This document shows, piece after piece, positions 5,573 through 33,482 of a DNA stretch of 64,000 nt. Where the stretch lies: positions 1 through 64,000 of the IMG/VR virus record IMGVR_UViG_3300030339_000003; one strand, 5' to 3'. Each line of letters opens with the position of its first letter. Position 1 is the first letter of the stretch. Both the position numbers and the translations under genes were made by a program. The notes beneath the pieces were generated by a model. It saw only the letters and a list, made by a program, of their open reading frames with translations, made no database searches and was not told the DNA's origin.

Positions 5573-6067
5573 TTATGTTCTAAAGGTTCGGTAAGAACCG
5601 TCAATAATTTCTTCATGACTTACTAAACGATAACCCGCCGCTTCCATGCTGACATTAATATACCGTGTATCGGGTATGATCTTTTCGTGTAAATGGCCGT
5701 GAATGTTTAGTCGTTGACGTAACGCCATTTCGTGTACCGGAAAGTGACTTACTAAGAAGGGATGACGAGGCCAACGCCAACTCCCTTCAATGTGATCTAA
5801 GATCCCATCAAAGTCTCTGTAATGAAGCTTTCTTTCAAAGTCATGGTTACCCACAACTAAACGTTTCTTAAAAGAAAACTTTCTTAATATATCCGGACAC
5901 TCTGCACCAACAAAACAATCCCCAACAAAAGTGACTTCATCGTTTGCTTTAACATCAGCTAATAGGTTCCACATGAACTCGTCATGGTATCCCAATGTCA
6001 CAAATTGGGGACGTTGTTTCAAGATGCTTTTATCGCCGTTGTGCATGTCTGCACAGAAATAATGCAT
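5573..6067 (-). CDS. Calcineurin-like metallophosphoesterase
   Basis: Motifs DMH, GD, GNHD, SH, HGHLH. Confidence 0.9.
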   Translation of the reverse strand: MHYFCADMHNGDKSILKQRPQFVTLGYHDEFMWNLLADVKANDEVTFVGDCFVGAECPDILRKFSFKKRLVVGNHDFERKLHYRDFDGILDHIEGSWRWPRHPFLVSHFPVHEMALRQRLNIHGHLHEKIIPDTRYINVSMEAAGYRLVSHEEIIDGSYRTFRT

Positions 6068-6477: not shown

Positions 6478-6942
6478 TTATTGGTAAATAGCAATACCTG
6501 TAGGATTGCGGGCTAATAAAACTTTGTTTGTTTCAAAACACAATCGAGCGTCATCATAAGAATCGCTAACACGCAAGACCATAATAGGTGGCATGTGCTC
6601 ATCCGGAACTGTGCCGTTTTTCATTTGTAATAAAGATTCGGATTCTTGGAATCGACGACTAAACATATCAGAGACAACATTGATTTCCAATGAATCTATA
6701 AACTCTTTACTTAATCCTTCTAAATACGTTCTTTTCCAGATGGTTAATTTTGAAAGAATAACGTCACCGAATGCTTCAGGTGAAAGAGATGGAGAAACAT
6801 TATTAGTCAATTCTTCCATTAAGTTTGCATAGTTTATTTTGTTAGCATTAATAAAGAAATGCTTACTTAAAACTAATGAACATTCTTTACGTTCTTCTTC
6901 GGACAACGGTGGAACATATTGTTTAATATTAACGATACCCAT
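6478..6942 (-). CDS. Hypothetical protein, PL[ST]xE paralog family
   Basis: KQYVPPLSEEERKEC; start probably ATG 6942, just after the upstream stop. Confidence 0.7.
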   Translation of the reverse strand: MGIVNIKQYVPPLSEEERKECSLVLSKHFFINANKINYANLMEELTNNVSPSLSPEAFGDVILSKLTIWKRTYLEGLSKEFIDSLEINVVSDMFSRRFQESESLLQMKNGTVPDEHMPPIMVLRVSDSYDDARLCFETNKVLLARNPTGIAIYQ

Positions 6943-6944
6943 AA

Positions 6945-7073
6945 TTACATCCACCCTAATACTTTACCGATGATGATACCAATACCTGCAATACCAAAAG
7001 AGGCAAGGATAACAAAAACCCAAAATAATGCTTTAATGCCGTCTTCAAATGCTTTAGTTACAGGGTTGCTCAT
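6945..7073 (-). CDS. Small membrane protein (42 aa)
   Basis: Manual: MSNPVTKAFEDGIKALFWVFVILASFGIAGIGIIIGKVLGWM; TAATG-coupled to the upstream gene, SD AAGGA. Confidence 0.7.
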   Translation of the reverse strand: MSNPVTKAFEDGIKALFWVFVILASFGIAGIGIIIGKVLGWM

Positions 7074-7654
7074 TACGCGTCCTTAAACTTGTTATCGAAA
7101 ATAGATTGTATTTCAGATATCCAGTTATTGATAATATCACGGTCAGTTTCGCTAAATTTATTAACATCCAACGGGAATGTCGGCAATTTATAAACTGCCG
7201 GCGCAGATGAAGGATGAACAATTTCTGTAGCGCGAGCAAGCAATAATTCATCTGGAATATTTTTGTAATATGCCGGATAAATGATAGTATCTAATTCACC
7301 TAACAAAAGTTTATTAGTAAAGGAATTAAAACAGATTTTCCACAATTGTTCATCATTGGTATCTTGAATCTCGAAATTTAATTTATTTACGAAATCAAGA
7401 GAACAAAGATTAAAATATTGTGTTTTCCAATTATTAAATACTTCGGATACCGCATGAGCATAATAAATTTTCATTGCGTGAATTGATAAATTGTTGGCGT
7501 CTGACATTTTGATTTGTGCAAGCGCTTTAGTTAATGCCTTACCAGCTCTGAGTTGATCTTGTTTATTCCCTGCGGTTGATACCAACCAATAGCACTGTTC
7601 GCGTTCATGTGGAGTTAACGGTAAAGTGCATAAATTAAATTTAGACGTATCCAT
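7073..7654 (-). CDS. Hypothetical protein, PL[ST]xE paralog family
   Basis: LCTLPLTPHEREQC; WKTQY..S.DFV segment shared with the 6478 ORF. Confidence 0.75.
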   Translation of the reverse strand: MDTSKFNLCTLPLTPHEREQCYWLVSTAGNKQDQLRAGKALTKALAQIKMSDANNLSIHAMKIYYAHAVSEVFNNWKTQYFNLCSLDFVNKLNFEIQDTNDEQLWKICFNSFTNKLLLGELDTIIYPAYYKNIPDELLLARATEIVHPSSAPAVYKLPTFPLDVNKFSETDRDIINNWISEIQSIFDNKFKDA

Positions 7655-7662
7655 AGGTCACC

Positions 7663-7794
7663 TTATTTTAAACAATATTCAAAAAAAGTATTGTTATTAC
7701 TAAACAGTTTATTAATGGCGTGTTGATAACGAATACCATGTTCAGCAGTCAATGGAGGGAAAAATTGATTAACATTAATCGATACTTTAGACAT
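7663..7794 (-). CDS. Small protein (43 aa), PL[ST]xE family fragment
   Basis: Manual: MSKVSINVNQFFPPLTAEHGIRYQHAINKLFSNNNTFFEYCLK; SD AAGGA; first gene after the early promoter. Confidence 0.65.
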   Translation of the reverse strand: MSKVSINVNQFFPPLTAEHGIRYQHAINKLFSNNNTFFEYCLK

Positions 7795-7810
7795 TACATA
7801 TTCCTTATTA

Positions 7811-7862
7811 ACTAGAGTAAATTAAGATGGGATTAATCTACTCTAGTAATGTAGGGTTGAGA
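7811..7862 (-). promoter_or_regulatory. phiKZ-type early promoter plus 5' hairpin
   Basis: TCAACCC-TACATTAC (core 7846-7853); 15-bp stem at 7811-7847. Confidence 0.7.
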
Positions 7863-7885: not shown

Positions 7886-8446
7886 TTATTTTGAATAAGG
7901 AAAATCATTCTTTTTGATTTTAACCATACGGCCATCGGGATGATGCCAAACGATACCTTCGATGTCACTATCTTTAAGGTATTCCATTATACCTTCGTAA
8001 TCACGCGGACCGTGCATTAACCAATGAGCGCCATGACGATAAAGAACATGCTCAGTTAAGTTTTCAGGATTAGGACCATGCCGCGTACCAATTTTTGGGC
8101 CGCATACTTCATACGTTCCATCTTCCGGATAATCGGACAGAGCTGCGATAGCTTCTTTAATAAACTTATCTTGACCTTTGGTAGGTAACACCCAGCCAGG
8201 CCAATGCCCAGTAACTGGATCTGGTTCAGGTTGCGCAGGAATAAAATCAGGTGGTGGTGTGCGACCAGTTTTTGCATCATAACGAATATAGACAATACCT
8301 TTTTCTATCAATATCGCCATACCATCGTATTTGCGCGTGGCAGTTCCTTCCCCGGCAATAACCCACTCGGCACCTTCACTGATTTCGTTATAAACTTTAC
8401 GATTACCTTCATAACTTCTTTTAAATAAAGATAAAATCTTTTTCAT
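7886..8446 (-). CDS. ATP-dependent RNA ligase-like nucleotidyltransferase (DUF5565/Rlig1-like)
   Basis: WVIAGEGTATRKYDG (motif I KxDG), GTYEVCG, EGIVW, KIK. Confidence 0.7.
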   Translation of the reverse strand: MKKILSLFKRSYEGNRKVYNEISEGAEWVIAGEGTATRKYDGMAILIEKGIVYIRYDAKTGRTPPPDFIPAQPEPDPVTGHWPGWVLPTKGQDKFIKEAIAALSDYPEDGTYEVCGPKIGTRHGPNPENLTEHVLYRHGAHWLMHGPRDYEGIMEYLKDSDIEGIVWHHPDGRMVKIKKNDFPYSK

Positions 8447-8455
8447 AACTGGCCC

Positions 8456-9502
8456 TTAAATAGCTACTGGTGCTTTGATAGGATCGTGATGGTTATAATT
8501 GATCAACTCAAAATCATCAATCGTGTAATCGAAGATAGAATCCTTTTTCTTAATATACATAAGCGGCTTTGCATATGGTTCACGAGTTAATTGCAACTTA
8601 ACTTGTTCCAGATGGTTTTGATAGATGTGCACATCAACACCATTGTAAACAAGTTCACCTGGCACCATGTTAACTTGCTGGGCAATCATTTGCGTAAGCA
8701 AAGCATATGAAGCGATGTTAAACGGTAAACCTAAGAAAGTGTCCGAACTACGCATGAGGAAGAAGCAGTTTAGTCGACGAGTGGGGATACCAGCGTCATC
8801 AAACTGTTTCTTTAATTTCTCAGGTTCTGCTATCTCGCCGTTTTCTGGATTAAGAAGCAACATGTGAACCACACCGAATTGATATTTTTTATGACGAAAC
8901 AGTTCAAAACGTTCGTACAATGACAATTCGGTAGTAGTGAACTGGAAATAGTTGTGACAAGGTTCTAATGCCATTTGATCTAACTGACCCACATTAATAG
9001 CACTGACATAAATACGACGGTTATCGGGATCGTTCTTTAACAAGTCAATTACTTTTTGAATCTGATTAGTGGAACGACGATAAACACACGCAGGAGGGTT
9101 GCCATTATCTTTCTGCATGTAACCTTCAAAATGGTAACCTTTGGATTCCAAATGGCATCTGATACGGTGTCCGGTATCATGTGTTATATAAGTGTCAACC
9201 CAATCGGTCCATTGTTTACCATAGACTGGACCCAAGTCACCATTTTTATCAGCCCATTCTCGCCAGATCTTAACCCCATTATCTTCCAGGTACTCAATGT
9301 TGGTTTCGCCTTTAAGGAACCAAAGCAGTTCATGGATGATTGAACGCAAATGAGTTTTCTTGGTAGTAACCAAAGGGAAACCATCTGCCAGATTAAAACG
9401 TAACATACGACCAAATACAGATAACGTGCCAGTACCAGTACGATCTGATTTAGGAGTACCGCTCGTTAATACATCTTCGAGTAATGCCAAATAGTTTTTC
9501 AT
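8456..9502 (-). CDS. thyA: Thymidylate synthase
   Basis: [49 protein letters not shown]. Confidence 0.97.
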
Positions 9503-9823: not shown

Positions 9824-10375
9824 TTAAAAGATTAAATTATTGCCTGGAGTGGGTTCGGGTGTCGCATCTTTAAACCCTTCCATACCTTTATTAAACAATA
9901 GTTCATTATAGGCAGTGATCTTTTGTTGGATGGATGGATAGATTTCATCCAGGTTAATGTCCATGTAAAGTTTGCCTTCCTGCAAAGCGATTAACGTTGG
10001 ACCTAATTCCATATCAATCAACAATTGGCCTTTTGGTGTACCATCGTGGTTTTTAGACGAACCCGTAGTAATTTTAACAAAGACACCTTCAATTTGTTCT
10101 GGTGTCAATTGAACTGTTTTTAAGAAATCATCAACAAGGTTATCAGCTCCTGCTTGAACTTTAGCAATGCTTTCCTCAATACGCATTACGTCAAAATCAT
10201 TATGAATGCCAAAACCCAAACACGTTGCTAAAGTAAATTCATTATTAAACTTTTTAAATGAATCTTTATTAAGTTCTAACAATTCATGTTCTGCAAGTTC
10301 AACATTCATTTGCTCGATTTCTTCGGGTGTTAACGGCAGGGCAACCTGCCGTATTAAACGTTTCTTAGTTACCAT
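9824..10375 (-). CDS. Hypothetical protein, PL[ST]xE paralog family
   Basis: RQVALPLTPEEIEQM. Confidence 0.75.
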   Translation of the reverse strand: MVTKKRLIRQVALPLTPEEIEQMNVELAEHELLELNKDSFKKFNNEFTLATCLGFGIHNDFDVMRIEESIAKVQAGADNLVDDFLKTVQLTPEQIEGVFVKITTGSSKNHDGTPKGQLLIDMELGPTLIALQEGKLYMDINLDEIYPSIQQKITAYNELLFNKGMEGFKDATPEPTPGNNLIF

Positions 10376-11109: not shown

Positions 11110-11727
11110 TTAACGCTCGATGATTTGTTCAGTGGTGAGTTTGGCATTAGGGTCAGTAATGAACGCAAGTTGCAATCCATCACGTTGACAATCACCCAAT
11201 GCATTATGGTTAGCGAACTCCATACCGGTTTTAATGTAACCTTTGATTTCACCCGTTGCTTGGAAAATAGCAGTAGGGACGTCAAGGATTTCATTATAAC
11301 CAATTGGGTTCTTGATCTTTAATAACTTGCACGCATTATTCGTCCAAACATAATCAGCATGTGTACGACGACAGAACACGATAGGTTTGTTCGACATAAG
11401 CCATTTAAAGAACTCAGGTAATGACTTAGAAATACTGGTCGGGTTTTTTAATACTTCTGCAATTTGAGAAGCATTACGTTCACGCCACCACTTGCCTGTT
11501 GCTTTGTCAATATCAAACCCTAAGAAAAACTGCTCAGTTAAATCCAGATTAACATAGAAGTTAAGGTCAGGAATTTCCATCGCCAATTTAGTTTCTTCCA
11601 CACTGAAACGGTTAAACTTAAACCCGCCAAAGCTTAACAGACCAGCATCAGGTTGTAGAGATGCAGATTCGTAATCGATCACAGCAGTGTTCGCATTAGC
11701 AATAACTTGTTCTGTAGAAATAGACAT
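11110..11727 (-). CDS. DEDDh 3'-5' exo(ribo)nuclease (Rv2179c/DUF5051-like)
   Basis: VIDYES, WW, HAD, HNALGDC motifs. Confidence 0.8.
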   Translation of the reverse strand: MSISTEQVIANANTAVIDYESASLQPDAGLLSFGGFKFNRFSVEETKLAMEIPDLNFYVNLDLTEQFFLGFDIDKATGKWWRERNASQIAEVLKNPTSISKSLPEFFKWLMSNKPIVFCRRTHADYVWTNNACKLLKIKNPIGYNEILDVPTAIFQATGEIKGYIKTGMEFANHNALGDCQRDGLQLAFITDPNAKLTTEQIIER

Positions 11728-17790: not shown

Positions 17791-18456
17791 TTAGTCGCGT
17801 GAATAAGGAGAATTAATATCATAAGGATGTTGATATTGTGGTCTGTTATAATTTGGCCCTTGCATTTGTTGGTTGGGTTGACCACCGCCATAAACATTTT
17901 GCGCAAACCCTGGTCCCATTGGCGCACCTTGATACGCTTGCTCTGTTTGTTGACCCCATACAACCATGTCACGAATTACAAAAGCAGAAATTTCAACCAG
18001 AGGCTCATCTACTTTGCCAGATGTGAATTCAAAATTAAATGAATTGATATAAGCTTCAACATCGACTTTATTAAAGAACCAATGAATCCTTTTGAATTCG
18101 ACAACTCGGTCAAACTTTTCTTCGAGTGCGGTAAAAATATTACGAGTTGTTAACGGCTCGCCAAACATATTTTGGTCTATAATCAAGAAAGACGACATTA
18201 ATTTAACCGGTGGCATATATGTCGGAAGTGGCGAGTGTAAACAAATTGCTGACAAGGTTGAAACTACCTCAACACCTGTTAACAATTCAAGAATACGTTT
18301 GTCATCCCAACCCATATTTGCATCAAGCTCTGCAACACAATATATGGCATCTTTACGGTTATCGATATCTGCGAATTCCATTACCAAAGTTTTGTTTAAT
18401 TGGAGATTTAGATCACCCAACTCGGGAACAGTACCCCATGAATTATTGTCAGTCAT
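17791..18456 (-). CDS. Hypothetical protein with Q/N/G/P/Y-rich C-terminal tail
   Basis: Overlaps the AAA gene by 8 nt; SD AAGGAG. Confidence 0.75.
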   Translation of the reverse strand: MTDNNSWGTVPELGDLNLQLNKTLVMEFADIDNRKDAIYCVAELDANMGWDDKRILELLTGVEVVSTLSAICLHSPLPTYMPPVKLMSSFLIIDQNMFGEPLTTRNIFTALEEKFDRVVEFKRIHWFFNKVDVEAYINSFNFEFTSGKVDEPLVEISAFVIRDMVVWGQQTEQAYQGAPMGPGFAQNVYGGGQPNQQMQGPNYNRPQYQHPYDINSPYSRD

Positions 18457-19681
18457 TTTTAATAAACTCCTTTAATGCTAAGTTAAATTGATTGAAGTCC
18501 CATTTGTTTGCAATAACCAATTCTTGTAATTCACCACCGGTAATCTTCACACCGGCAGGTAATTCGAATTGTGCATCTGGGTACATCATGGTAATGTATT
18601 CTTTAATTTCAACATCAGTAAAGGCAGGGATAAAGATTTTCTTATCCACACGACCCGGACGTGTTAATGCTTTAGACAATTTATCGGCGATGTTAGTAGT
18701 AATGAAAATGATTTCACCACTCAATTCTTTTAACCCGTCTAATGTATTTAAAATAGTAACGATAGACACTTCATCGGTATCTACAGGTTTTTCATCTTCA
18801 ACTTTTTGTGCTCGAGTTTGTGCCCCCTTACAACTTTCAATATCTTCCAAGGTAATAATACTGTTCTTGGGTGCGCTGTAAAACGCTGCAGCGAATGTAA
18901 GATTAGTCATGGTAGATATATTTAACATAGCAATTTCACGATCGTATTCGTGCGCTACGGCTTTAATAATACTGGTCTTACCCGTTCCAGGAGGCCCATA
19001 CAAAAGAATCGTCAATTTGTATGGGATGCCGCGATCAACGTACCATTGTTTATTATTTAAAAACTTATCAATAGTTTCGATGATTTCAGCTTTAGCTGTT
19101 TTGTTAATAATAACGGAACTTAATTTACGTTTAGGCGCGGCACCTAATAAACTCCAACACACGTCTTTACCTGCAAAGGTAAATATTTCACGTTCATCGG
19201 GTAAACGCTTTTCACTAAACTCATTAAAGAAATTAACCATGATTCTTTTATTTAAAGAAACGGTTGATATGGTGATCTTTAATTTTTCTTTTGTAGATGC
19301 TTGTGATTCTAATCGACTTATGACAACACGGTACAAACGCTTTTTATAAATCATCCAATGGGTGCCTACTCCTGGGCCTAGTGCGCCAAAAGCTGACCAA
19401 GAACTATTCACTAAGCCAACGGATTTTGTAAACTTAAAACATTCTACTTTTTCAAACCATTCTAAAAAGTTCTTAAAGTTTTTGTCTGAATTACCTTCCC
19501 CGCTATTATCCATAGAAAGACGAACAACAAACATATCTTCAAATCTATTTTGAAGATATTTCGGACCTTTCCAAAAAGCACCTACAACACCAGCAGCCAA
19601 CGTGATACTAATTGTGCTACCTATTAATGGTAGTTCTTTAGCAAGTTCGTTAAACTTAGTAAACATATCAAGCAACAACAT
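18449..19681 (-). CDS. BCS1-like membrane-anchored AAA+ ATPase
   Basis: N-terminal TM; BCS1_N-like GPGVGTHWMIY; WYVDRGIPYK..LLYGPPGTGKTS; LEDIE; LNTLDG; TTN; RPGRVD. Confidence 0.85.
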   Translation of the reverse strand: MLLLDMFTKFNELAKELPLIGSTISITLAAGVVGAFWKGPKYLQNRFEDMFVVRLSMDNSGEGNSDKNFKNFLEWFEKVECFKFTKSVGLVNSSWSAFGALGPGVGTHWMIYKKRLYRVVISRLESQASTKEKLKITISTVSLNKRIMVNFFNEFSEKRLPDEREIFTFAGKDVCWSLLGAAPKRKLSSVIINKTAKAEIIETIDKFLNNKQWYVDRGIPYKLTILLYGPPGTGKTSIIKAVAHEYDREIAMLNISTMTNLTFAAAFYSAPKNSIITLEDIESCKGAQTRAQKVEDEKPVDTDEVSIVTILNTLDGLKELSGEIIFITTNIADKLSKALTRPGRVDKKIFIPAFTDVEIKEYITMMYPDAQFELPAGVKITGGELQELVIANKWDFNQFNLALKEFIKND

Positions 19682-26728: not shown

Positions 26729-27442
26729 TTAACCTTTAATTAATTGTTGGAAACGTGTTGAGATAATTGCATAATACAAATAAGGTGGGACGTTCTCATA
26801 AGCGCCTAATGAGAAACCTTCATTAACTTCTACCAACCCCCACTGACCGTTGATTAATCCCATATCAAAACTTCCTACGGTATAACCCCTTACCCGTAAT
26901 AACGTCATGATATCTTTAATAATAGGAATTAATTCTTTTGATCCATCAGAACAATAAAACGTATCGTTTTTGTAATACACTCGGCACTCGTCGGTAATGC
27001 TAGCTACGGCAGCAGAATAGATTTCAACCTTTGGACTAAATGCATCAAAGTAAAGGTTAGAAGTCGAATGCGCAATGTAACCGGTAAACAGTTTTAACAC
27101 TTTCACTGGCTTAATAAAACGAGGCAAAGTGGATTCGTCTAACTTACCCATCGTTGTTTTAATGATATCGCGGTGTAAATATTGCTTGAGGTAATCGGGA
27201 TAGTCGTTAGGGATAGGTAAATCTTTCTTATACTTTCTTAACGTGTGTTTAACAAAGTCAATATCGCCTGCCGCAAAAGCTAATTTATCAGGCAAAGACT
27301 TCCGAATGATTTCTTTACTCCCCACTAATTCAACAATAAGTTTTAATTCAGCAACATGAGCTTGGATATAATCCTTTAGTATTTGTTCTTCTTTATCTAA
27401 CTTACCTGTACCATGTTGTTCTAACCAAACCATTTTCCACAT
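26729..27442 (-). CDS. ATP-grasp domain protein (DUF4343/R2K-like)
   Basis: DYP..L..YLHR, FIKP...KLFTG, ECRVY, FDMG..W.LVEVNEGFSLGAY. Confidence 0.8.
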   Translation of the reverse strand: MWKMVWLEQHGTGKLDKEEQILKDYIQAHVAELKLIVELVGSKEIIRKSLPDKLAFAAGDIDFVKHTLRKYKKDLPIPNDYPDYLKQYLHRDIIKTTMGKLDESTLPRFIKPVKVLKLFTGYIAHSTSNLYFDAFSPKVEIYSAAVASITDECRVYYKNDTFYCSDGSKELIPIIKDIMTLLRVRGYTVGSFDMGLINGQWGLVEVNEGFSLGAYENVPPYLYYAIISTRFQQLIKG

Positions 27443-27484: not shown

Positions 27485-27916
27485 TTATTCGCAATCACGA
27501 ACGTGTTCGTAAGTAAAGATGACTTCTTTACCAAGCCAATTAGCCAACTCAGTATTAATCTTAATTAAATCAAAACGAGTAGGGTCGTACACCAAAGACA
27601 TGTGCAATAACAACGTAGAATAAGAATGAGTATAACCTGCGTCTGTTAAGCGTCTGAATTCCTGTTGTAAGCCCACGCTATGCAGTTCTGCTACAATTGC
27701 ATCGCCCAGTTCTTTAAACCCAATGATGGTGGCTTTAAAGAGCACGTGCGAGTTAATATCACAACGTGGTTCATCACATTCTGATTTATCATACATCAGC
27801 GTAATATGAAACGGATAAGTGGTAGCGGGCTGTATGCTCAGATCGGTTAATGCTGTTTTTAATTGCTTTTCGGTTTCTTCAAGTAGGTTAACCGATATGT
27901 ACCCCAGCTTTGGCAT
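27485..27916 (-). CDS. 2H phosphodiesterase, anti-CBASS Acb1 (T4 gp57B)-like
   Basis: Two Hx[T/S] motifs, FHITLMY and LHMSL; 143 aa. Confidence 0.7.
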   Translation of the reverse strand: MPKLGYISVNLLEETEKQLKTALTDLSIQPATTYPFHITLMYDKSECDEPRCDINSHVLFKATIIGFKELGDAIVAELHSVGLQQEFRRLTDAGYTHSYSTLLLHMSLVYDPTRFDLIKINTELANWLGKEVIFTYEHVRDCE

Positions 27917-28463
27917 GTTGGTTCCTCAAATGTTTAATGGTCTTATACATAACATTTTGATTACGCTTTTGCTTACGGTACTTTGAACTTACCTTTAAAT
28001 ACTTACGCAATCCAACAGGTAACACCAGGCCATGTTTCTTTAACACATAGTCAATAAAGATGGATCTTGACGGAGCATTATTAAAGTAACCTGTTAAACT
28101 TAAATAAGAATTAAAAGGATTACCCGAATAAAAGGTGGGCTCTTCATCAGCCACTTTATTAACTTTCAGTTCCTCAACATCAAATGCAGTAATGCCGTCG
28201 GGGAAATAAGCATCGTGTATGTAACCATCGTCAGTAATATACACGTGGAAAGGACCCACATTAATCGTGGGCGTTAATCCATAGCCAATCGCAATACGTT
28301 CTACTAATAAAGCCATGACATGACAATCCCCACTGTTAATGATTCCAGGGATTGAAAGTTTCGACTTATTACCCTCAGCGATATACAATAATTCAAATTC
28401 TTGAATTAAGCTATCAATGATCGATTTGTATAACTTTCTTTTAGGGCTCATATCCTGCGTCAA
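27888..28463 (-). CDS. Transglutaminase/papain-like Cys-His-Asp protein
   Basis: INSGDC..MA, FHVYI, IHDAYFPDG. Confidence 0.5.
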   Translation of the reverse strand: MTQDMSPKRKLYKSIIDSLIQEFELLYIAEGNKSKLSIPGIINSGDCHVMALLVERIAIGYGLTPTINVGPFHVYITDDGYIHDAYFPDGITAFDVEELKVNKVADEEPTFYSGNPFNSYLSLTGYFNNAPSRSIFIDYVLKKHGLVLPVGLRKYLKVSSKYRKQKRNQNVMYKTIKHLRNQHAKAGVHIG

Positions 28464-28947
28464 TCTCCGTTACACCAACACTTGCCGCTTTAGCAAGAAC
28501 GTCAACCATTTCATTATACTTATCGCCTGTGTGTGCTTTGACTTTGTGGAAATAGATTTTGTTTTCCTTAATCAAAGGATAAGCACGTTGCCACAAGTCC
28601 AAGTTCTTGATAGGTTTCTCTGCACCTGTTTCCCAATCAACACGTACCCAATTCTTACGCTTCCATCCATGAATCCATTTCATCAATCCATCTTTGGCGT
28701 AATTGGAATCAATATAGATGTCAAAGGTTTTGTTAGGACCAAATTCCTCTAAAGCTTTAATAACAGCTAAAAGCTCCATACGGTTATTGGTTGTCTTAAT
28801 AAACCCACCGCTTAATTTAAGTTCGGTGTTTTCATCGATAGGGATAACACAGCCCCAACCACCAGGCCCAGGATTAGGTGAAGCACTACCATCGGTATAA
28901 ACTACGATAGACTTATCTTTAGCAGGCTCTTCATATTTAGCCGTCAT
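28441..28947 (-). CDS. rnhA: Ribonuclease HI
   Basis: YTDGS..NPGPGGWG, TTNNRMEL, DS.Y, KN.DLW, VKAH..NE.VD. Confidence 0.97.
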   Translation of the reverse strand: MTAKYEEPAKDKSIVVYTDGSASPNPGPGGWGCVIPIDENTELKLSGGFIKTTNNRMELLAVIKALEEFGPNKTFDIYIDSNYAKDGLMKWIHGWKRKNWVRVDWETGAEKPIKNLDLWQRAYPLIKENKIYFHKVKAHTGDKYNEMVDVLAKAASVGVTEIDAGYEP

Positions 28948-30683: not shown

Positions 30684-30938
30684 CTACGCGAAATCGCCCA
30701 GGCGCAAACCGGCATTTAGATTAGGACTTTGAAGGAAGATGTATACCTTTTCATCACCCACGGTGCGGTAATCGTGAGGGATTTCATCCAACCATTTCAT
30801 TTCCGCTCTGCTTGAAACAACAACCAAACGGGTCAATGTTTCAAAGGTAATGAATTTAGCCACAGTACCCAACTTAGAACGAACTAAATTGATATCGGCT
30901 TCTTTACCAACAAAATGAACTTCAAAATGACTACCCAT
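30684..30938 (-). CDS. Hypothetical protein
   Basis: 84 aa, overlaps the ligase stop. Confidence 0.65.
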   Translation of the reverse strand: MGSHFEVHFVGKEADINLVRSKLGTVAKFITFETLTRLVVVSSRAEMKWLDEIPHDYRTVGDEKVYIFLQSPNLNAGLRLGDFA

Positions 30939-32817
30939 TGATCTTCCTTACTATATCGTTGATGGAGATTTCATTGTTTACATAATAAACAGGAATATTT
31001 AACTTTAATGCCTGCGTAGTGGATGCAGTTTCTGTGTCACTAAACCCTACAATAACACACTCTACACCTTTAACTACTCGAGGCAGTACTTCGATATCAC
31101 TTTTCAGTAACTGCTCTGCAATGAAGTTACGCGGCGCTTCAAACTTACCCGTTAATACGACTTTCTTATAACCACGAATGAACGTATCAGGACGAATCAC
31201 TAAAGCTGTCGCAAAGCGTTCAATATAACGCACACGCTTTTTATCTGTAAATGCTTTTAACAGATACATTGTTTTAGCAGGAGTGAATGTTTTCTTAATA
31301 AGTTCATGGTCTTTAATGAACTCTAAGAACTTTTCGATATTAACACAAAGATGACTGATTTCGTCTGCGGTTGATTTGCCCACTTCTTCGATATTTAACG
31401 CGTAGATAAATTGACTCAACGTCTTTTTACGGTTTTGACGAATGATCTCGTAAAAACGTGGACCGACTTGTTCCAATTCTAAACTATAAATATCTAAAGC
31501 AGTTTTAATGAACCCACGACCAGCCCACTCGGTAATGGTTTCACGACCTACGTCTTTAATATCCAACCCTTCTTTGCCTGTTGCACGAACAATGTCATTA
31601 ATGAATTGATCCGCACAATCAGCGGTATTGTTACAGGTTAATGTTGGACCAATCAAAGACACCGGACCACCACAACACGGACATACTTCAGGTAAACGCA
31701 TGCGTGGTGTGTCGGTACGATCAATGACTTCATCCAGATGCGGAACAGAGTCGCCAGACATAACAATACGGATACGATCACCTGCACCAATCTGCAAGCC
31801 TAACAACTTACCTGCGTTAAATCCATTGGCACGTTGGCATTTAGACCCAGCAATCATTACTGGTTCGTAAATAAGAGTAGGGGTAATGCGACAACGGGTT
31901 ACAGACCATTCAACATCTTTAAACCGCGTTACACCAAACAACGTATTGTATTTAAAAGCAATAGACCATTTCATTTCATCGCCCAAACGCTGACGAGTAG
32001 ACAGTTTGTTTGCTTTCATGACATAACCATCAAAAGGTTCAACCGTATTGGGTGCTTGAGTTAACAATTCTTTTTCTGTTACCAGGCGAGGAATGTCAAA
32101 CCCTTGATCGGCAAACCAATTACGAAGTTGTACACCGCTTTCAATTTTCAATAGCGGTAACACTTTAGGGTCGATCGCATAAACACTGCACGTAATCTTA
32201 CCCTTAACGCTAAAACGATTATTTAAACTACTGCGTAACCAGCCACTGATTTGATTACGTTGTTTAAAGTCTGGAGTATTCGTTGATTCTTTAAGATCTT
32301 CGATATCCAGATAAGTAAGGTGTGCTTCTGCACGAATATCAAACTTATCTACATCTTTAAGTTGTTCAATAAAAGGCGGGATATGTTTGAAGTAACTTAA
32401 CTGATGCGTGATGTTTTCACCTTCAGTTAATGTACCTTTGGTGACCAGGTGTTTTAACTTACCGAATTCATATTGAAGTTCAAGAGCCATACCGTCTAAC
32501 TTTGTTTCAATATAAACATCATTGTCAAAAGAAGCTTTTAATTCATCGTAAGCACCAAAGTCGTACGTACGATTCAAAGAAGGAAAAGGTCTAAAATGCG
32601 GAACTCTTTTCAATTCTGCTTTATTGGAAAACACAACGGTCGCTTTTTGATCTAAGTTGTATTCCCAATTAGGGTGTTCGGCCGCTAACGTATCAAAGCG
32701 GTTCTTTAACAGATCGTATTCGGAATCACTGATGATGCTTTTGTTCTCACCCCAAAACAATCCATTGTGGTAATCCAATTGCTCTTTTAAATCTGCTAAT
32801 GTGGTAAATGTGCTCAT
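30931..32817 (-). CDS. ligA: NAD-dependent DNA ligase
   Basis: ISDSEYD, KLDG adenylation motif, DG..K, AFKY, Zn finger CPCC..C..C, C-terminal BRCT VVLTG. Confidence 0.92.
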   Translation of the reverse strand: MSTFTTLADLKEQLDYHNGLFWGENKSIISDSEYDLLKNRFDTLAAEHPNWEYNLDQKATVVFSNKAELKRVPHFRPFPSLNRTYDFGAYDELKASFDNDVYIETKLDGMALELQYEFGKLKHLVTKGTLTEGENITHQLSYFKHIPPFIEQLKDVDKFDIRAEAHLTYLDIEDLKESTNTPDFKQRNQISGWLRSSLNNRFSVKGKITCSVYAIDPKVLPLLKIESGVQLRNWFADQGFDIPRLVTEKELLTQAPNTVEPFDGYVMKANKLSTRQRLGDEMKWSIAFKYNTLFGVTRFKDVEWSVTRCRITPTLIYEPVMIAGSKCQRANGFNAGKLLGLQIGAGDRIRIVMSGDSVPHLDEVIDRTDTPRMRLPEVCPCCGGPVSLIGPTLTCNNTADCADQFINDIVRATGKEGLDIKDVGRETITEWAGRGFIKTALDIYSLELEQVGPRFYEIIRQNRKKTLSQFIYALNIEEVGKSTADEISHLCVNIEKFLEFIKDHELIKKTFTPAKTMYLLKAFTDKKRVRYIERFATALVIRPDTFIRGYKKVVLTGKFEAPRNFIAEQLLKSDIEVLPRVVKGVECVIVGFSDTETASTTQALKLNIPVYYVNNEISINDIVRKING

Positions 32818-32825
32818 GCCAACCC

Positions 32826-33482
32826 CTAGACTAACTTTTTAATATAATTATTAATATGTTCATTCAGTTTTAAAACATCTCTTGCAATGTTTTGCAAATA
32901 GAACTGAGGGAACTGATGATGCTTATCCCAAACAATCAAGTGGTCATTTTTAGGGATGACTTCTGTTTGATGGATTGGAAAGTCGTCTACCAACACATAA
33001 TGTTTATACCCTTGTGCATTCAGGTAGTCTACTTTACTTGGGTGTTCTTTAGAATTAATAACGTGAATAGATTTCCAATCAATGTCATTAAAATGTTTAT
33101 CTAAAGAATGCTTCGTGTAACGCTCACCATTGATACTGTATCCTCGATGGGTGCATACGTTCAGATTAAAGCGTGGGTCCTTGTTAATAGCCCGTAGCCA
33201 TGGCTTAAGTGCCTCATCTGGTTCTACAGTCAACATAAAGCGATCGTATTGTAAACCGTGTTCAAATACGCGCGCTTCTACTAATTTGGCGTCTTTCCCT
33301 TCAAGTGTTTTAACCGCTTTCAGGAAAGTAACATCACGGTTCATTGCGATGCCAAGAATCAAATGGTCAATCGAATCCCAAGAACTTTTGTGTTCGAGGT
33401 AATTCAACATATTGTTTCTAACATGCTTATGTGTTAAAAAAGTAAAATCATCCAGATCACAAAAGATATCAATGGGTTTCAT
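32826..33482 (-). CDS. HAD-superfamily hydrolase (5'-nucleotidase-like)
   Basis: IFCDLDD motif I, CTHRG, K, LVDD motif IV. Confidence 0.7.
   Translation of the reverse strand: MKPIDIFCDLDDFTFLTHKHVRNNMLNYLEHKSSWDSIDHLILGIAMNRDVTFLKAVKTLEGKDAKLVEARVFEHGLQYDRFMLTVEPDEALKPWLRAINKDPRFNLNVCTHRGYSINGERYTKHSLDKHFNDIDWKSIHVINSKEHPSKVDYLNAQGYKHYVLVDDFPIHQTEVIPKNDHLIVWDKHHQFPQFYLQNIARDVLKLNEHINNYIKKLV

What the first reader, a model, noticed from the sequence alone, without database searches (positions are those of the whole stretch)
7886..8446. Minimal Rlig1 (C12orf29/DUF5565)-like RNA ligase within a dispersed RNA heal-and-seal kit
Seen: a 186-aa nucleotidyltransferase core (KYDG, E, EGIVW, KIK) with no OB domain. 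The window also has a metallophosphoesterase (5573), a DEDDh exonuclease (11110), a 2H phosphodiesterase (27485) and a HAD hydrolase (32826). Known: phages repair tRNA cut by host anticodon nucleases (T4 Pnkp/Rnl1), and human Rlig1 is a 5'-3' RNA ligase. Inference: a non-Rnl1/Rnl2 repair route against RNA-targeting immunity, to which nucleus-forming phages remain vulnerable.
Basis: partly seen in the sequence, partly recalled or inferred. Interest (0 to 1): 0.62.

Follow-up and report, generated by a model that had tools for sequence, protein, structure and literature searches.

The report
Stand-alone RLIG1-type phage RNA ligase
A peat jumbo phage that builds a nucleus-like shell carries an intact 186-residue RNA-joining enzyme of the RLIG1 family already known from humans, bacteria and viruses, but it stands alone: the proposed RNA "heal-and-seal kit" around it does not hold up.

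Summary
The ORF is real: window 7886-8446, minus strand, 186 aa. It is a clear RLIG1 (C12orf29/DUF5565) family ligase. An AlphaFold model (pLDDT 93) superposes on the Yasminevirus RLIG1 crystal structure (Z 17.2, 177 of 186 residues, rmsd 2.5 A). All seven residues shown by mutation to matter there are present: K39, D41, R55, E113, H138, E163 and K176. It belongs to a short (~188 aa) bacterial and phage clade with more than 3,600 members. This clade is already PHROG 14301 and is labelled "RNA ligase" in RefSeq phages. A 2024 PNAS paper assayed bacterial and phage homologues on tRNA halves and already proposed an anti-immunity role.

The phage is phiKZ-like, with a chimallin homologue, a PhuZ-like tubulin and split RNA polymerases. 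The "kit" is not supported:
- The 2H enzyme is an Acb1 (anti-CBASS) family member.
- The HAD looks like an NT5C nucleotidase.
- The metallophosphoesterase and the 2H enzyme occur in many phages that lack the ligase.
- The genome shows no polynucleotide 5'-kinase, RtcB, Rnl1, Rnl2, RlaP or CCA-adding enzyme.

Without a kinase, HEPN-type cuts (PrrC, RloC, Cas13, Csm6) cannot be sealed. The gene is best read as a seal-only ligase for 5'-phosphate/3'-hydroxyl RNA breaks. It is a new member of a known kind, of modest interest.

The parts
7886..8446 (-). RLIG1-family (short bacterial/phage clade) ATP-dependent RNA ligase, 186 aa. The stop codon is 7886-7888. The gene starts 9 nt after the stop of thymidylate synthase.
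8321..8332 (-). Motif I, K39-Y-D-G42. K39 is the predicted AMP-accepting lysine (Yasminevirus K73) and D41 corresponds to D75.
   Evidence: Alignment; invariant in A1; mutational data in PMC11494293
8282..8284 (-). Motif Ia arginine R55 (Yasminevirus R89, which contacts the ribose 3'-OH).
8108..8110 (-). Motif III glutamate E113 (Yasminevirus E174).
8033..8035 (-). Motif IIIa histidine H138 (Yasminevirus H195).
7946..7960 (-). Motif IV, E163-G-I-V-W167 (E163 corresponds to Yasminevirus E240).
7913..7921 (-). Motif V, K176-I-K178 (K176 corresponds to Yasminevirus K253).
8192..8209 (-). Clade-invariant G80-H-W-P-G-W85 block. It is partly shared with Yasminevirus RLIG1 (GH..G) and lies outside the classical ligase motifs. 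Its function is untested; an RNA-binding surface is a guess.
5573..6067 (-). Metallophosphoesterase (PHROG 547). Assessed as a kit member and not linked: homologues occur in 1,246 phage records, mostly without the ligase.
11110..11727 (-). Rv2179c-like DEDDh 3'-5' exoribonuclease. No link to the ligase beyond sitting in the same genome region.
27485..27916 (-). 2H phosphoesterase of the Acb1 (anti-CBASS) family, with H37-I-T and H105-M-S motifs. Best read as a degrader of cyclic-nucleotide signals, not an RNA end-healing enzyme.
32826..33482 (-). Probable HAD-fold hydrolase nearest to NT5C 5'(3')-deoxyribonucleotidases. There is no Pfam hit, so this is a lead only.
30931..32817 (-). NAD-dependent DNA ligase (adenylation and OB domains). 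It shows that DNA sealing is already covered by another gene.

Best explanation
The gene encodes a single-domain, ATP-dependent 5'-PO4/3'-OH RNA ligase of the RLIG1 family, in the short (~188 aa) clade found in bacteria and phages. Inferred mechanism, by homology: (1) K39 attacks the alpha-phosphate of ATP to give ligase-AMP; (2) AMP passes to a 5'-phosphate RNA end; (3) a 3'-OH attacks the adenylylated end to close the break. The likely substrates are breaks in loops of folded RNAs such as tRNA anticodon loops, as assayed for family members. In this phiKZ-like, chimallin-encoding jumbo phage it is an accessory gene that works alone as a sealing-only enzyme. It can rejoin 5'-P/3'-OH ends, the kind left by metal-dependent RNases. 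It cannot rejoin the 2',3'-cyclic-P/5'-OH ends left by HEPN-type nucleases, because the phage shows no 5'-kinase. Shown here: fold, family, catalytic residues, conservation, genome context, and absence of recognisable partner enzymes. Inferred: activity, RNA specificity, and the biological role as counter-defence or RNA maintenance.
For: The AF2 model has pLDDT 93. The best structural match is Yasminevirus RLIG1, 9c6l: Foldseek E 8e-10 and TMq 0.76; VIA Z 17.2, 177 residues aligned, rmsd 2.5 A, against Z 8.5 for T4 Rnl1 and 8.0 for NgrRnl. The family profile hits 9c6l at E 2e-10. Pfam RLIG1 gives E 7e-5, and most close homologues carry PF17720. PHROG 14301 'RNA ligase' matches full length. The seven catalytic residues line up and are invariant in 39 homologues. 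Family biochemistry: auto-adenylylation on the motif I lysine, and ligation of 5'-P/3'-OH RNA and tRNA halves, including unnamed bacterial and phage homologues (PMC11494293; PMC9931718). A separate NAD-dependent DNA ligase sits in the window. The genome has no match to Rnl1, Rnl2, RtcB, AAA_33 kinase, tRNA-ligase kinase, RlaP or CCA-adding enzyme. No ORF has an N-terminal P-loop. No partner is conserved next to the gene in 80 viral or 18 bacterial loci. Some link to RNA repair exists elsewhere: RtcB lies next to it in L088/L089 and L059. An identical copy sits in a second peat sample, and a variant in another run carries one synonymous change and G146S at a variable position.
Against: No assay has been done on this protein. 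Pfam RLIG1 scores just under its gathering cut-off (22.2 vs 25 bits). I could not establish which homologues were active in the PNAS assay ('C. phage', 'R. bacterium'), so activity of the ~186 aa form itself is not documented here. A very divergent or non-P-loop kinase could have been missed. A host kinase could supply 5'-phosphates. The biological substrate is unknown.
Confidence: 0.75

Rival explanations
1. The ligase is the sealing arm of a dispersed heal-and-seal kit (MPE, 2H, HAD, DEDDh) that repairs tRNA or mRNA cut by PrrC/RloC, Cas13 or type III systems.
For: All five genes exist in the window. Calcineurin-like, 2H and HAD enzymes do serve as end-healing enzymes in some jumbo phages (PMC7824862). 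The MPE and the ligase stay about 3 kb apart in two close relatives.
Against: No 5'-kinase is detectable, yet HEPN cuts need one. The 2H enzyme is in the Acb1 family, above cut-off, with no LigT hit. The HAD is nearest to NT5C nucleotidases. Homologues of the MPE (1,246 records) and the 2H enzyme (93 records) are found in phages such as RisingSun, EL, Klebsiella Miami and T5-likes, none of which is among the 25 ligase-bearing records. The MPE-ligase proximity is seen only in close relatives, so it reflects shared ancestry.
Confidence: 0.08
2. The enzyme mainly stops at step 2 and 5'-adenylylates RNAs (App-RNA or Ap2N 'caps'). This would change the stability or recognition of phage or host RNAs rather than repair breaks.
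For: Human RLIG1 converts 5'-p-RNA to Ap2N-RNA in vitro and accounts for about 20% of such caps in cells (PMC13598233). The protein is a minimal domain with no extra RNA-binding module to hold a 3'-OH end.
Against: Family members, including viral and bacterial ones, complete ligation on tRNA halves. There are no data for phage homologues.
Confidence: 0.07
3. It acts on DNA, or on RNA-DNA junctions, in replication or repair. It sits directly downstream of thymidylate synthase.
For: The gene follows thyA by 9 nt. The fold is shared with DNA ligases.
Against: A full NAD-dependent DNA ligase is encoded nearby. Human RLIG1 did not seal DNA-splinted nicks. Placement next to thyA is not conserved outside close relatives. 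DNA ligases score only Z 6-7 against 17 for RLIG1.
Confidence: 0.05

Closest known systems
Yasminevirus RLIG1 (PDB 9c6l/9c6m) and human RLIG1/C12orf29 (Pfam PF17720, formerly DUF5565)
   Same: Same fold (Z 17.2, 177 residues). Same seven catalytic residues. One-domain architecture without an OB or Rnl1-type RNA-binding domain. Expected 5'-P/3'-OH RNA ligation through a lysyl-AMP intermediate.
   Different: About 90 residues shorter than the Yasminevirus enzyme (277 aa) and about 140 shorter than the human one. It lacks roughly 35 N-terminal residues and a roughly 29-residue insert between motifs Ia and III. It has a 4-residue GTRH insertion. Sequence identity is only about 22-27%, and the Pfam score falls just below the cut-off.
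PHROG 14301 'RNA ligase': Ralstonia jumbo phages RP12/RP31/FLC, Burkholderia phage FLC9, mycobacteriophages (Paola, Gengar and others), Cellulophaga phage phi10:1
   Same: Same length and same motifs, 44-65% identity. A stand-alone accessory gene with no conserved neighbour. Ten of the 14 big contigs holding the closest homologues, RP12 among them, carry a phiKZ-type RNA polymerase subunit.
   Different: This copy is in a new peat phage lineage whose chimallin is only about 30% identical to that of any isolate. None of these phage proteins is identifiably characterised in the literature I could read.
T4 Rnl1 with Pnkp (tRNA repair against PrrC)
   Same: ATP-dependent 5'-P/3'-OH ligase chemistry. 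A phage-borne accessory gene. A plausible tRNA-loop substrate.
   Different: No Rnl1 C-terminal tRNA-binding domain. No Pnkp or any kinase-phosphatase partner in the genome. Structural similarity is limited to the core (Z 8.5).
T4 Acb1 (for the 2H gene at 27485)
   Same: Similar size (143 aa), two HxT/S motifs, and a Pfam Acb1 match above cut-off.
   Different: Too divergent for a direct sequence hit to any solved structure. Activity is untested. RefSeq and PHROG 755 label its homologues 'RNA ligase', which looks like a legacy LigT-type name.

Membership tests
RLIG1 (PF17720) | Sequence match to the family model | tested here: inconclusive
   Pfam E 7e-5 at 22.2 bits against a cut-off of 25, covering only residues 126-180. 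However, most homologues at 60-68% identity carry PF17720, and the clade profile hits the RLIG1 crystal-structure sequence at E 2e-10 over positions 35-184.
RLIG1 (PF17720) | RLIG1 fold: a single nucleotidyltransferase/ATP-grasp-like domain without an appended RNA-binding or OB domain | tested here: met
   The model (pLDDT 93) aligns to 9c6l with Z 17.2, rmsd 2.5 A, over 177 of 186 residues. The next-best families score Z 8.5 or less.
RLIG1 (PF17720) | Catalytic residues of motifs I, Ia, III, IIIa, IV and V (Yasminevirus K73, D75, R89, E174, H195, E240, K253) | tested here: met
   K39, D41, R55, E113, H138, E163 and K176 align to them and are invariant in 39 homologues.
RLIG1 (PF17720) | ATP-dependent auto-adenylylation and ligation of 5'-PO4/3'-OH RNA | not testable with these tools
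   Needs biochemistry. It has been shown for human, Yasminevirus and unnamed bacterial and phage homologues (PMC11494293, PMC9931718).
T4-type heal-and-seal RNA repair system | A polynucleotide 5'-OH kinase encoded with the ligase | tested here: not met
   No AAA_33 or tRNA_lig_kinase match at E<=1. No ORF has an N-terminal Walker A motif.
T4-type heal-and-seal RNA repair system | A 2',3'-cyclic phosphodiesterase or 3'-phosphatase dedicated to RNA ends and linked to the ligase | tested here: inconclusive
   MPE, 2H and HAD genes exist. They assign best to PHROG 547, Acb1 and NT5C-like families, and they do not co-occur with the ligase across phages. Activity on RNA ends was not tested.
T4-type heal-and-seal RNA repair system | Gene linkage or co-occurrence of the components | tested here: not met
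   The components are spread over 27 kb. No partner is conserved in 80 viral and 18 bacterial neighbourhoods.
Rnl1 / Rnl2 RNA ligases | Match to PF09511 or PF09414 | tested here: not met
   No match in the genome at E<=1. Only the structural core is similar.
Chimalliviridae-type nucleus-forming phage (the genome) | Chimallin (nuclear shell protein), PhuZ-like tubulin, split multisubunit RNA polymerases | tested here: met
   Genome 126786-128744 (-) hits annotated nuclear shell proteins at E 1e-85. Gene order matches phiKZ gp50-gp77. Tubulin and TubZ_C-like hits lie at 135215-136198. Actual nucleus formation is not testable here.
Acb1 (PF23474), for ORF 27485 | Family model match and the two HxT/S motifs of the 2H fold | tested here: met
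   E 8e-11 at 42.2 bits against a cut-off of 27. H37-I-T and H105-M-S are present. Cleavage of cyclic oligonucleotides was not tested.

The most novel reading that the evidence does not exclude
The ~186 aa clade may be the smallest self-sufficient polynucleotide ligase. In phiKZ-like phages, whose DNA is shielded but whose tRNAs and mRNAs are exposed in the cytoplasm, it may act as a seal-only counter-defence. On this reading it reverses 5'-P/3'-OH cuts made by metal-dependent defence RNases (PIN/VapC-like or Toprim/PARIS-like enzymes, for example) without any end-healing step. That route would be distinct from T4 Pnkp-Rnl1 and from RtcB.
Probability: 0.2. Interest if true: 0.6.

Novelty: new member of a known kind. 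Interest (0 to 1): 0.3.

Why it matters
The gene adds a well-preserved RLIG1-type ligase to a new chimallin-phage lineage. The closest copies of this gene recur in phiKZ-like jumbo phages: 10 of the 14 largest contigs carrying it have the phiKZ-type polymerase. This phage has no kinase I could recognise; in those contigs the only kinase-family matches above cut-off were in two non-phiKZ megaphages. If the 186-residue form is active alone, it would be an unusually small RNA ligase for tool use. It would also point to phage repair of a different class of RNA cuts than the classic T4 pathway. The analysis also corrects three labels: the nearby 2H enzyme is Acb1-like (anti-CBASS), not an RNA ligase or healing enzyme; the HAD looks like a nucleotidase; and the "kit" is a coincidence of common jumbo-phage genes.

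Tried and rejected
- Megablast of the region against phage records found nothing.
- NCBIfam gave no family.
- A direct search with phiKZ gp54 found no chimallin in this genome. This was resolved by gene order and by tblastn of the syntenic ORF.
- Using this phage's chimallin on 14 ligase-bearing big contigs gave no hits, even in RP12. That test was insensitive and I discarded it. A polymerase subunit worked instead.
- A single-protein chimallin scan of viral contigs found only near-identical fragments.
- Neighbourhood clustering for conserved partners in viral loci and bacterial loci found none. The recurrent neighbours were head-morphogenesis genes in small phages and lineage synteny in Massilia.
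- tRNA genes lie within 6 kb in only 5 of 60 viral loci. The phage's own two tRNAs lie about 130 kb away.
- The promoter and terminator scan found nothing above shuffled controls.
- Sequence searches of solved structures with the 2H and DEDDh proteins gave no useful hit.
- I could not identify the 'C. phage' and 'R. bacterium' homologues assayed in PMC11494293.
- No RNA run holds the region, so expression is unknown.
- No alternative genetic code was used.

Full report
**Observation**

The window has an ATG-initiated ORF at 7886-8446 on the minus strand, 186 aa long. The N-terminus (MKKI.SLF) matches its homologues, so the start codon is right. The gene begins 9 nt after the stop of a thymidylate synthase gene at 8456-9502.

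**Family**

- Pfam RLIG1 (PF17720, formerly DUF5565) is the only Pfam hit. It scores E 7e-5 at 22.2 bits, just under the 25-bit cut-off, and covers only the C-terminal third.
- PHROG 14301 'RNA ligase' matches residues 1-185 of a 186-position profile at E 5e-78.
- NCBIfam has no model for it.
- The word search returned 3,612 homologues. Nearly all are 184-205 aa long, and most carry a precomputed PF17720 hit.
- An alignment of 39 of them (A1) has 41 invariant columns. These include K39, D41, G42, R55, E113, H138, E163, G164, K176 and K178. Two further invariant stretches are clade blocks: H81-W85 of the GHWPGW block (G80 is nearly invariant) and R122/H123/G124/N126/P127/E128 of the GTRHG.NPE block.
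- A phmmer search of solved structures found only Yasminevirus RLIG1 (9c6l/9c6m), in three collinear pieces. The A1 profile raises this to E 2e-10 over positions 35-184.

**Structure**

AlphaFold2 with A1 gave mean pLDDT 93 and pTM 0.86. Foldseek's top ten hits are all chains of 9c6l/9c6m (E 8e-10, TMq 0.76). Next come Naegleria RNA ligase and T4 Rnl1, at E above 5e-3. VIA-align results:

| Match | Z | Notes |
|---|---|---|
| Yasminevirus RLIG1 (9c6l) | 17.2 | rmsd 2.5 A, 177 of 186 residues |
| T4 Rnl1 | 8.5 | core only |
| Naegleria NgrRnl | 8.0 | core only |
| T4 Rnl2 | 7.2 | core only |
| DNA ligases | 6-7 | core only |

The protein is therefore one nucleotidyltransferase domain of the RLIG1 type with nothing appended. 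[quoted passage not shown] This clade is about 90 residues shorter still.

**Catalytic residues**

In PMC11494293, mutating Yasminevirus K73, D75, R89, E174, H195, E240 or K253 reduced adenylylation and ligation. Using the alignment (chain index = native number + 1), these correspond to K39, D41, R55, E113, H138, E163 and K176. All seven are invariant in A1.

**What is already known**

- Human RLIG1 auto-AMPylates on the motif I lysine. It joins 5'-P/3'-OH single-stranded or hairpin RNA, but did not seal DNA-splinted nicks (PMC9931718).
- PMC11494293 states that RLIG1 homologues occur in some bacteria and viruses. The authors purified 'R. bacterium' and 'C. phage' homologues and report that several homologues ligate tRNA halves.
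[quoted passage not shown] I could not find out which species those two homologues were.
- A neighbourhood study of bacterial DUF5565 reported enrichment of RNA-related domains and tRNA genes (PMC10364804).
- RefSeq already labels the phage homologues 'RNA ligase'.

**The genome**

- The window is the first 64 kb of a complete 231,366 bp virus record with 39.5% GC. Its first 30 bases recur 127 bp from the end, which looks like an assembly overlap.
- It comes from peat metagenomes. An identical copy of the gene lies in a second peat sample. A variant in another run carries one synonymous change (G172) and G146S, at a variable column.
- BLASTP of phiKZ proteins shows collinear homologues of gp50, gp55, gp65, gp68, gp70, gp71/73, gp74, gp75 and gp77.
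- The 652 aa ORF in the gp54 position (genome 126786-128744, minus strand) hits annotated nuclear shell proteins of Erwinia phage RisingSun, Pseudomonas phage EL and Vibrio phages, at up to E 1e-85.
- A 327 aa ORF has weak Tubulin and phage TubZ_C matches.
- The 'nucleus-forming' label is therefore supported by gene content.

**The proposed kit**

Family scans give the following.

- **5573:** a small metallophosphoesterase (PHROG 547, E 2e-38; Pfam borderline). Its homologues occur in 1,246 phage records, including T5-like, Staphylococcus and Listeria phages and chimallin phages such as RisingSun.
- **11110:** an Rv2179c-like DEDDh exoribonuclease.
- **27485:** matches Pfam Acb1 (anti-CBASS protein 1) above cut-off and has both HxT/S motifs. 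It has no LigT-type hit. Its homologues occur in 93 records, including RisingSun, EL and Klebsiella Miami.
- **32826:** no Pfam hit. It shows DxD, T and DD motifs. Its nearest language-model clusters are NT5C 5'(3')-deoxyribonucleotidases.

None of the organism groups that hold the MPE or the 2H enzyme overlaps the 25 ligase-bearing phage records, which are Ralstonia, Burkholderia, Mycobacterium, Cellulophaga and Nocardia phages plus two uncultured phage records.

The genome also lacks the enzyme a heal-and-seal pathway cannot do without. There is no AAA_33 (PNK-type) or tRNA-ligase-kinase match at E<=1. No ORF has an N-terminal Walker A motif. There is also no Rnl1, Rnl2, RtcB, RlaP or CCA-adding enzyme.

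HEPN nucleases (PrrC, RloC, Cas13, Csm6) leave 2',3'-cyclic phosphate and 5'-OH ends; this is established knowledge. The ligase therefore could not reverse them unaided.

**Context elsewhere**

- In 80 viral loci no protein family is consistently adjacent. In small phages the gene sits beside head-morphogenesis genes.
- RtcB lies immediately downstream in L088/L089 and about 2 kb away in L059.
- In one 523 kb megaphage the next genes are a CoaE-like P-loop kinase and a cytidylyltransferase-like protein.
- These few cases tie the family to RNA repair in some genomes, but not in this one.
- Bacterial copies, mainly in Oxalobacteraceae and Sphaerotilaceae, are solitary genes.
- Of the 14 largest viral contigs with the closest homologues, 10 carry a phiKZ-type RNA polymerase subunit. 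A PNK-type kinase above cut-off appears in only two of the 14, both non-phiKZ megaphages.
- A quick maximum-likelihood tree places the window protein with two close relatives (L010, L012; SH-aLRT support 99). They sit inside a clade that mixes jumbo phages and Burkholderiales genomes, separate from a clade of 60 smaller viral contigs.
- In L010 and L012 the region is syntenic, including the MPE. This explains their proximity as shared ancestry.

**Conclusion**

The observation and the family assignment are right, and so is the phage type. The enzyme is best read as a stand-alone sealing ligase for 5'-P/3'-OH RNA breaks. A nearby NAD-dependent DNA ligase (30931-32817) makes a DNA role unnecessary.

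The kit and the specific link to PrrC, Cas13 or type III systems are not supported. The general anti-immunity idea is already published.

What remains open and mildly interesting:
- whether a 186-residue domain is a complete ligase on its own;
- which cuts it repairs in shielded-genome phages;
- whether it caps RNA with AMP instead of ligating it (PMC13598233).

Noticed in passing
window 27485-27916 (-): An Acb1-family 2H phosphoesterase (anti-CBASS type). Its homologues in RefSeq phage records and PHROG 755 are labelled 'RNA ligase'. In RisingSun, Joad, CBB and XbC2 they are labelled 'structural protein', which hints that the protein might be packaged in the virion.
   Followed up: partly
window 26729-27442 (-): An ATP-grasp protein of the R2K clade (PF18299, E 4e-13) lies immediately downstream of the Acb1-like gene. 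Its function is unknown.
   Followed up: no
window 8456-9502 (-): The thymidylate synthase is 348 aa, against a 266-position Pfam model, and matches in two stretches. It therefore carries sizeable insertions.
   Followed up: no
window 28441-28947 (-), 30931-32817 (-), 18449-19681 (-): RNase H (E 2e-40), an NAD-dependent DNA ligase (adenylation and OB domains), and a BCS1-like AAA+ ATPase lie in the same stretch.
   Followed up: partly
window 6478-6954, 7073-7654, 7666-7794, 9824-10375 (all -): Four ORFs with no family hits flank the ligase and share an N-terminal 'LP(P)L(T/S)xEE' motif. Pairwise BLASTP gives only E 0.004-0.012, so they may be a diverged paralogue family, but this is weak.
   Followed up: partly
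genome G000:C1 137993-138427; loci L015 3089-3171 and L016 2334-3209: The phage encodes only two tRNAs, Leu(TAA) and Asn(GTT). In two other phiKZ-type contigs, tRNAs of the same specificities (Leu-TAA in L015; Asn-GTT plus Gln-TTG in L016) lie about 3 kb upstream of their RLIG1-like gene.
   Followed up: no
window 7741 and below, in run X3: In a 2025 run of 'organism A', a contig keeps the ligase gene (two substitutions) but diverges from the window just downstream of it. A related phage therefore has different flanks.
   Followed up: no
window 7800-7850 (-): A 9 bp inverted repeat (ACTAGAGTA ... TACTCTAGT, with a loop of about 21 nt) lies just after the ligase stop codon and before a 43-codon ORF. 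It was not picked up by the terminator scan.
   Followed up: no
L007 6743-8490: In a 523 kb megaphage contig the RLIG1-like gene is followed by a 411 aa CoaE-like P-loop kinase (with a faint tRNA-ligase-kinase similarity) and a cytidylyltransferase-like gene. This is a possible true heal-and-seal or NAD-related module in that phage.
   Followed up: partly
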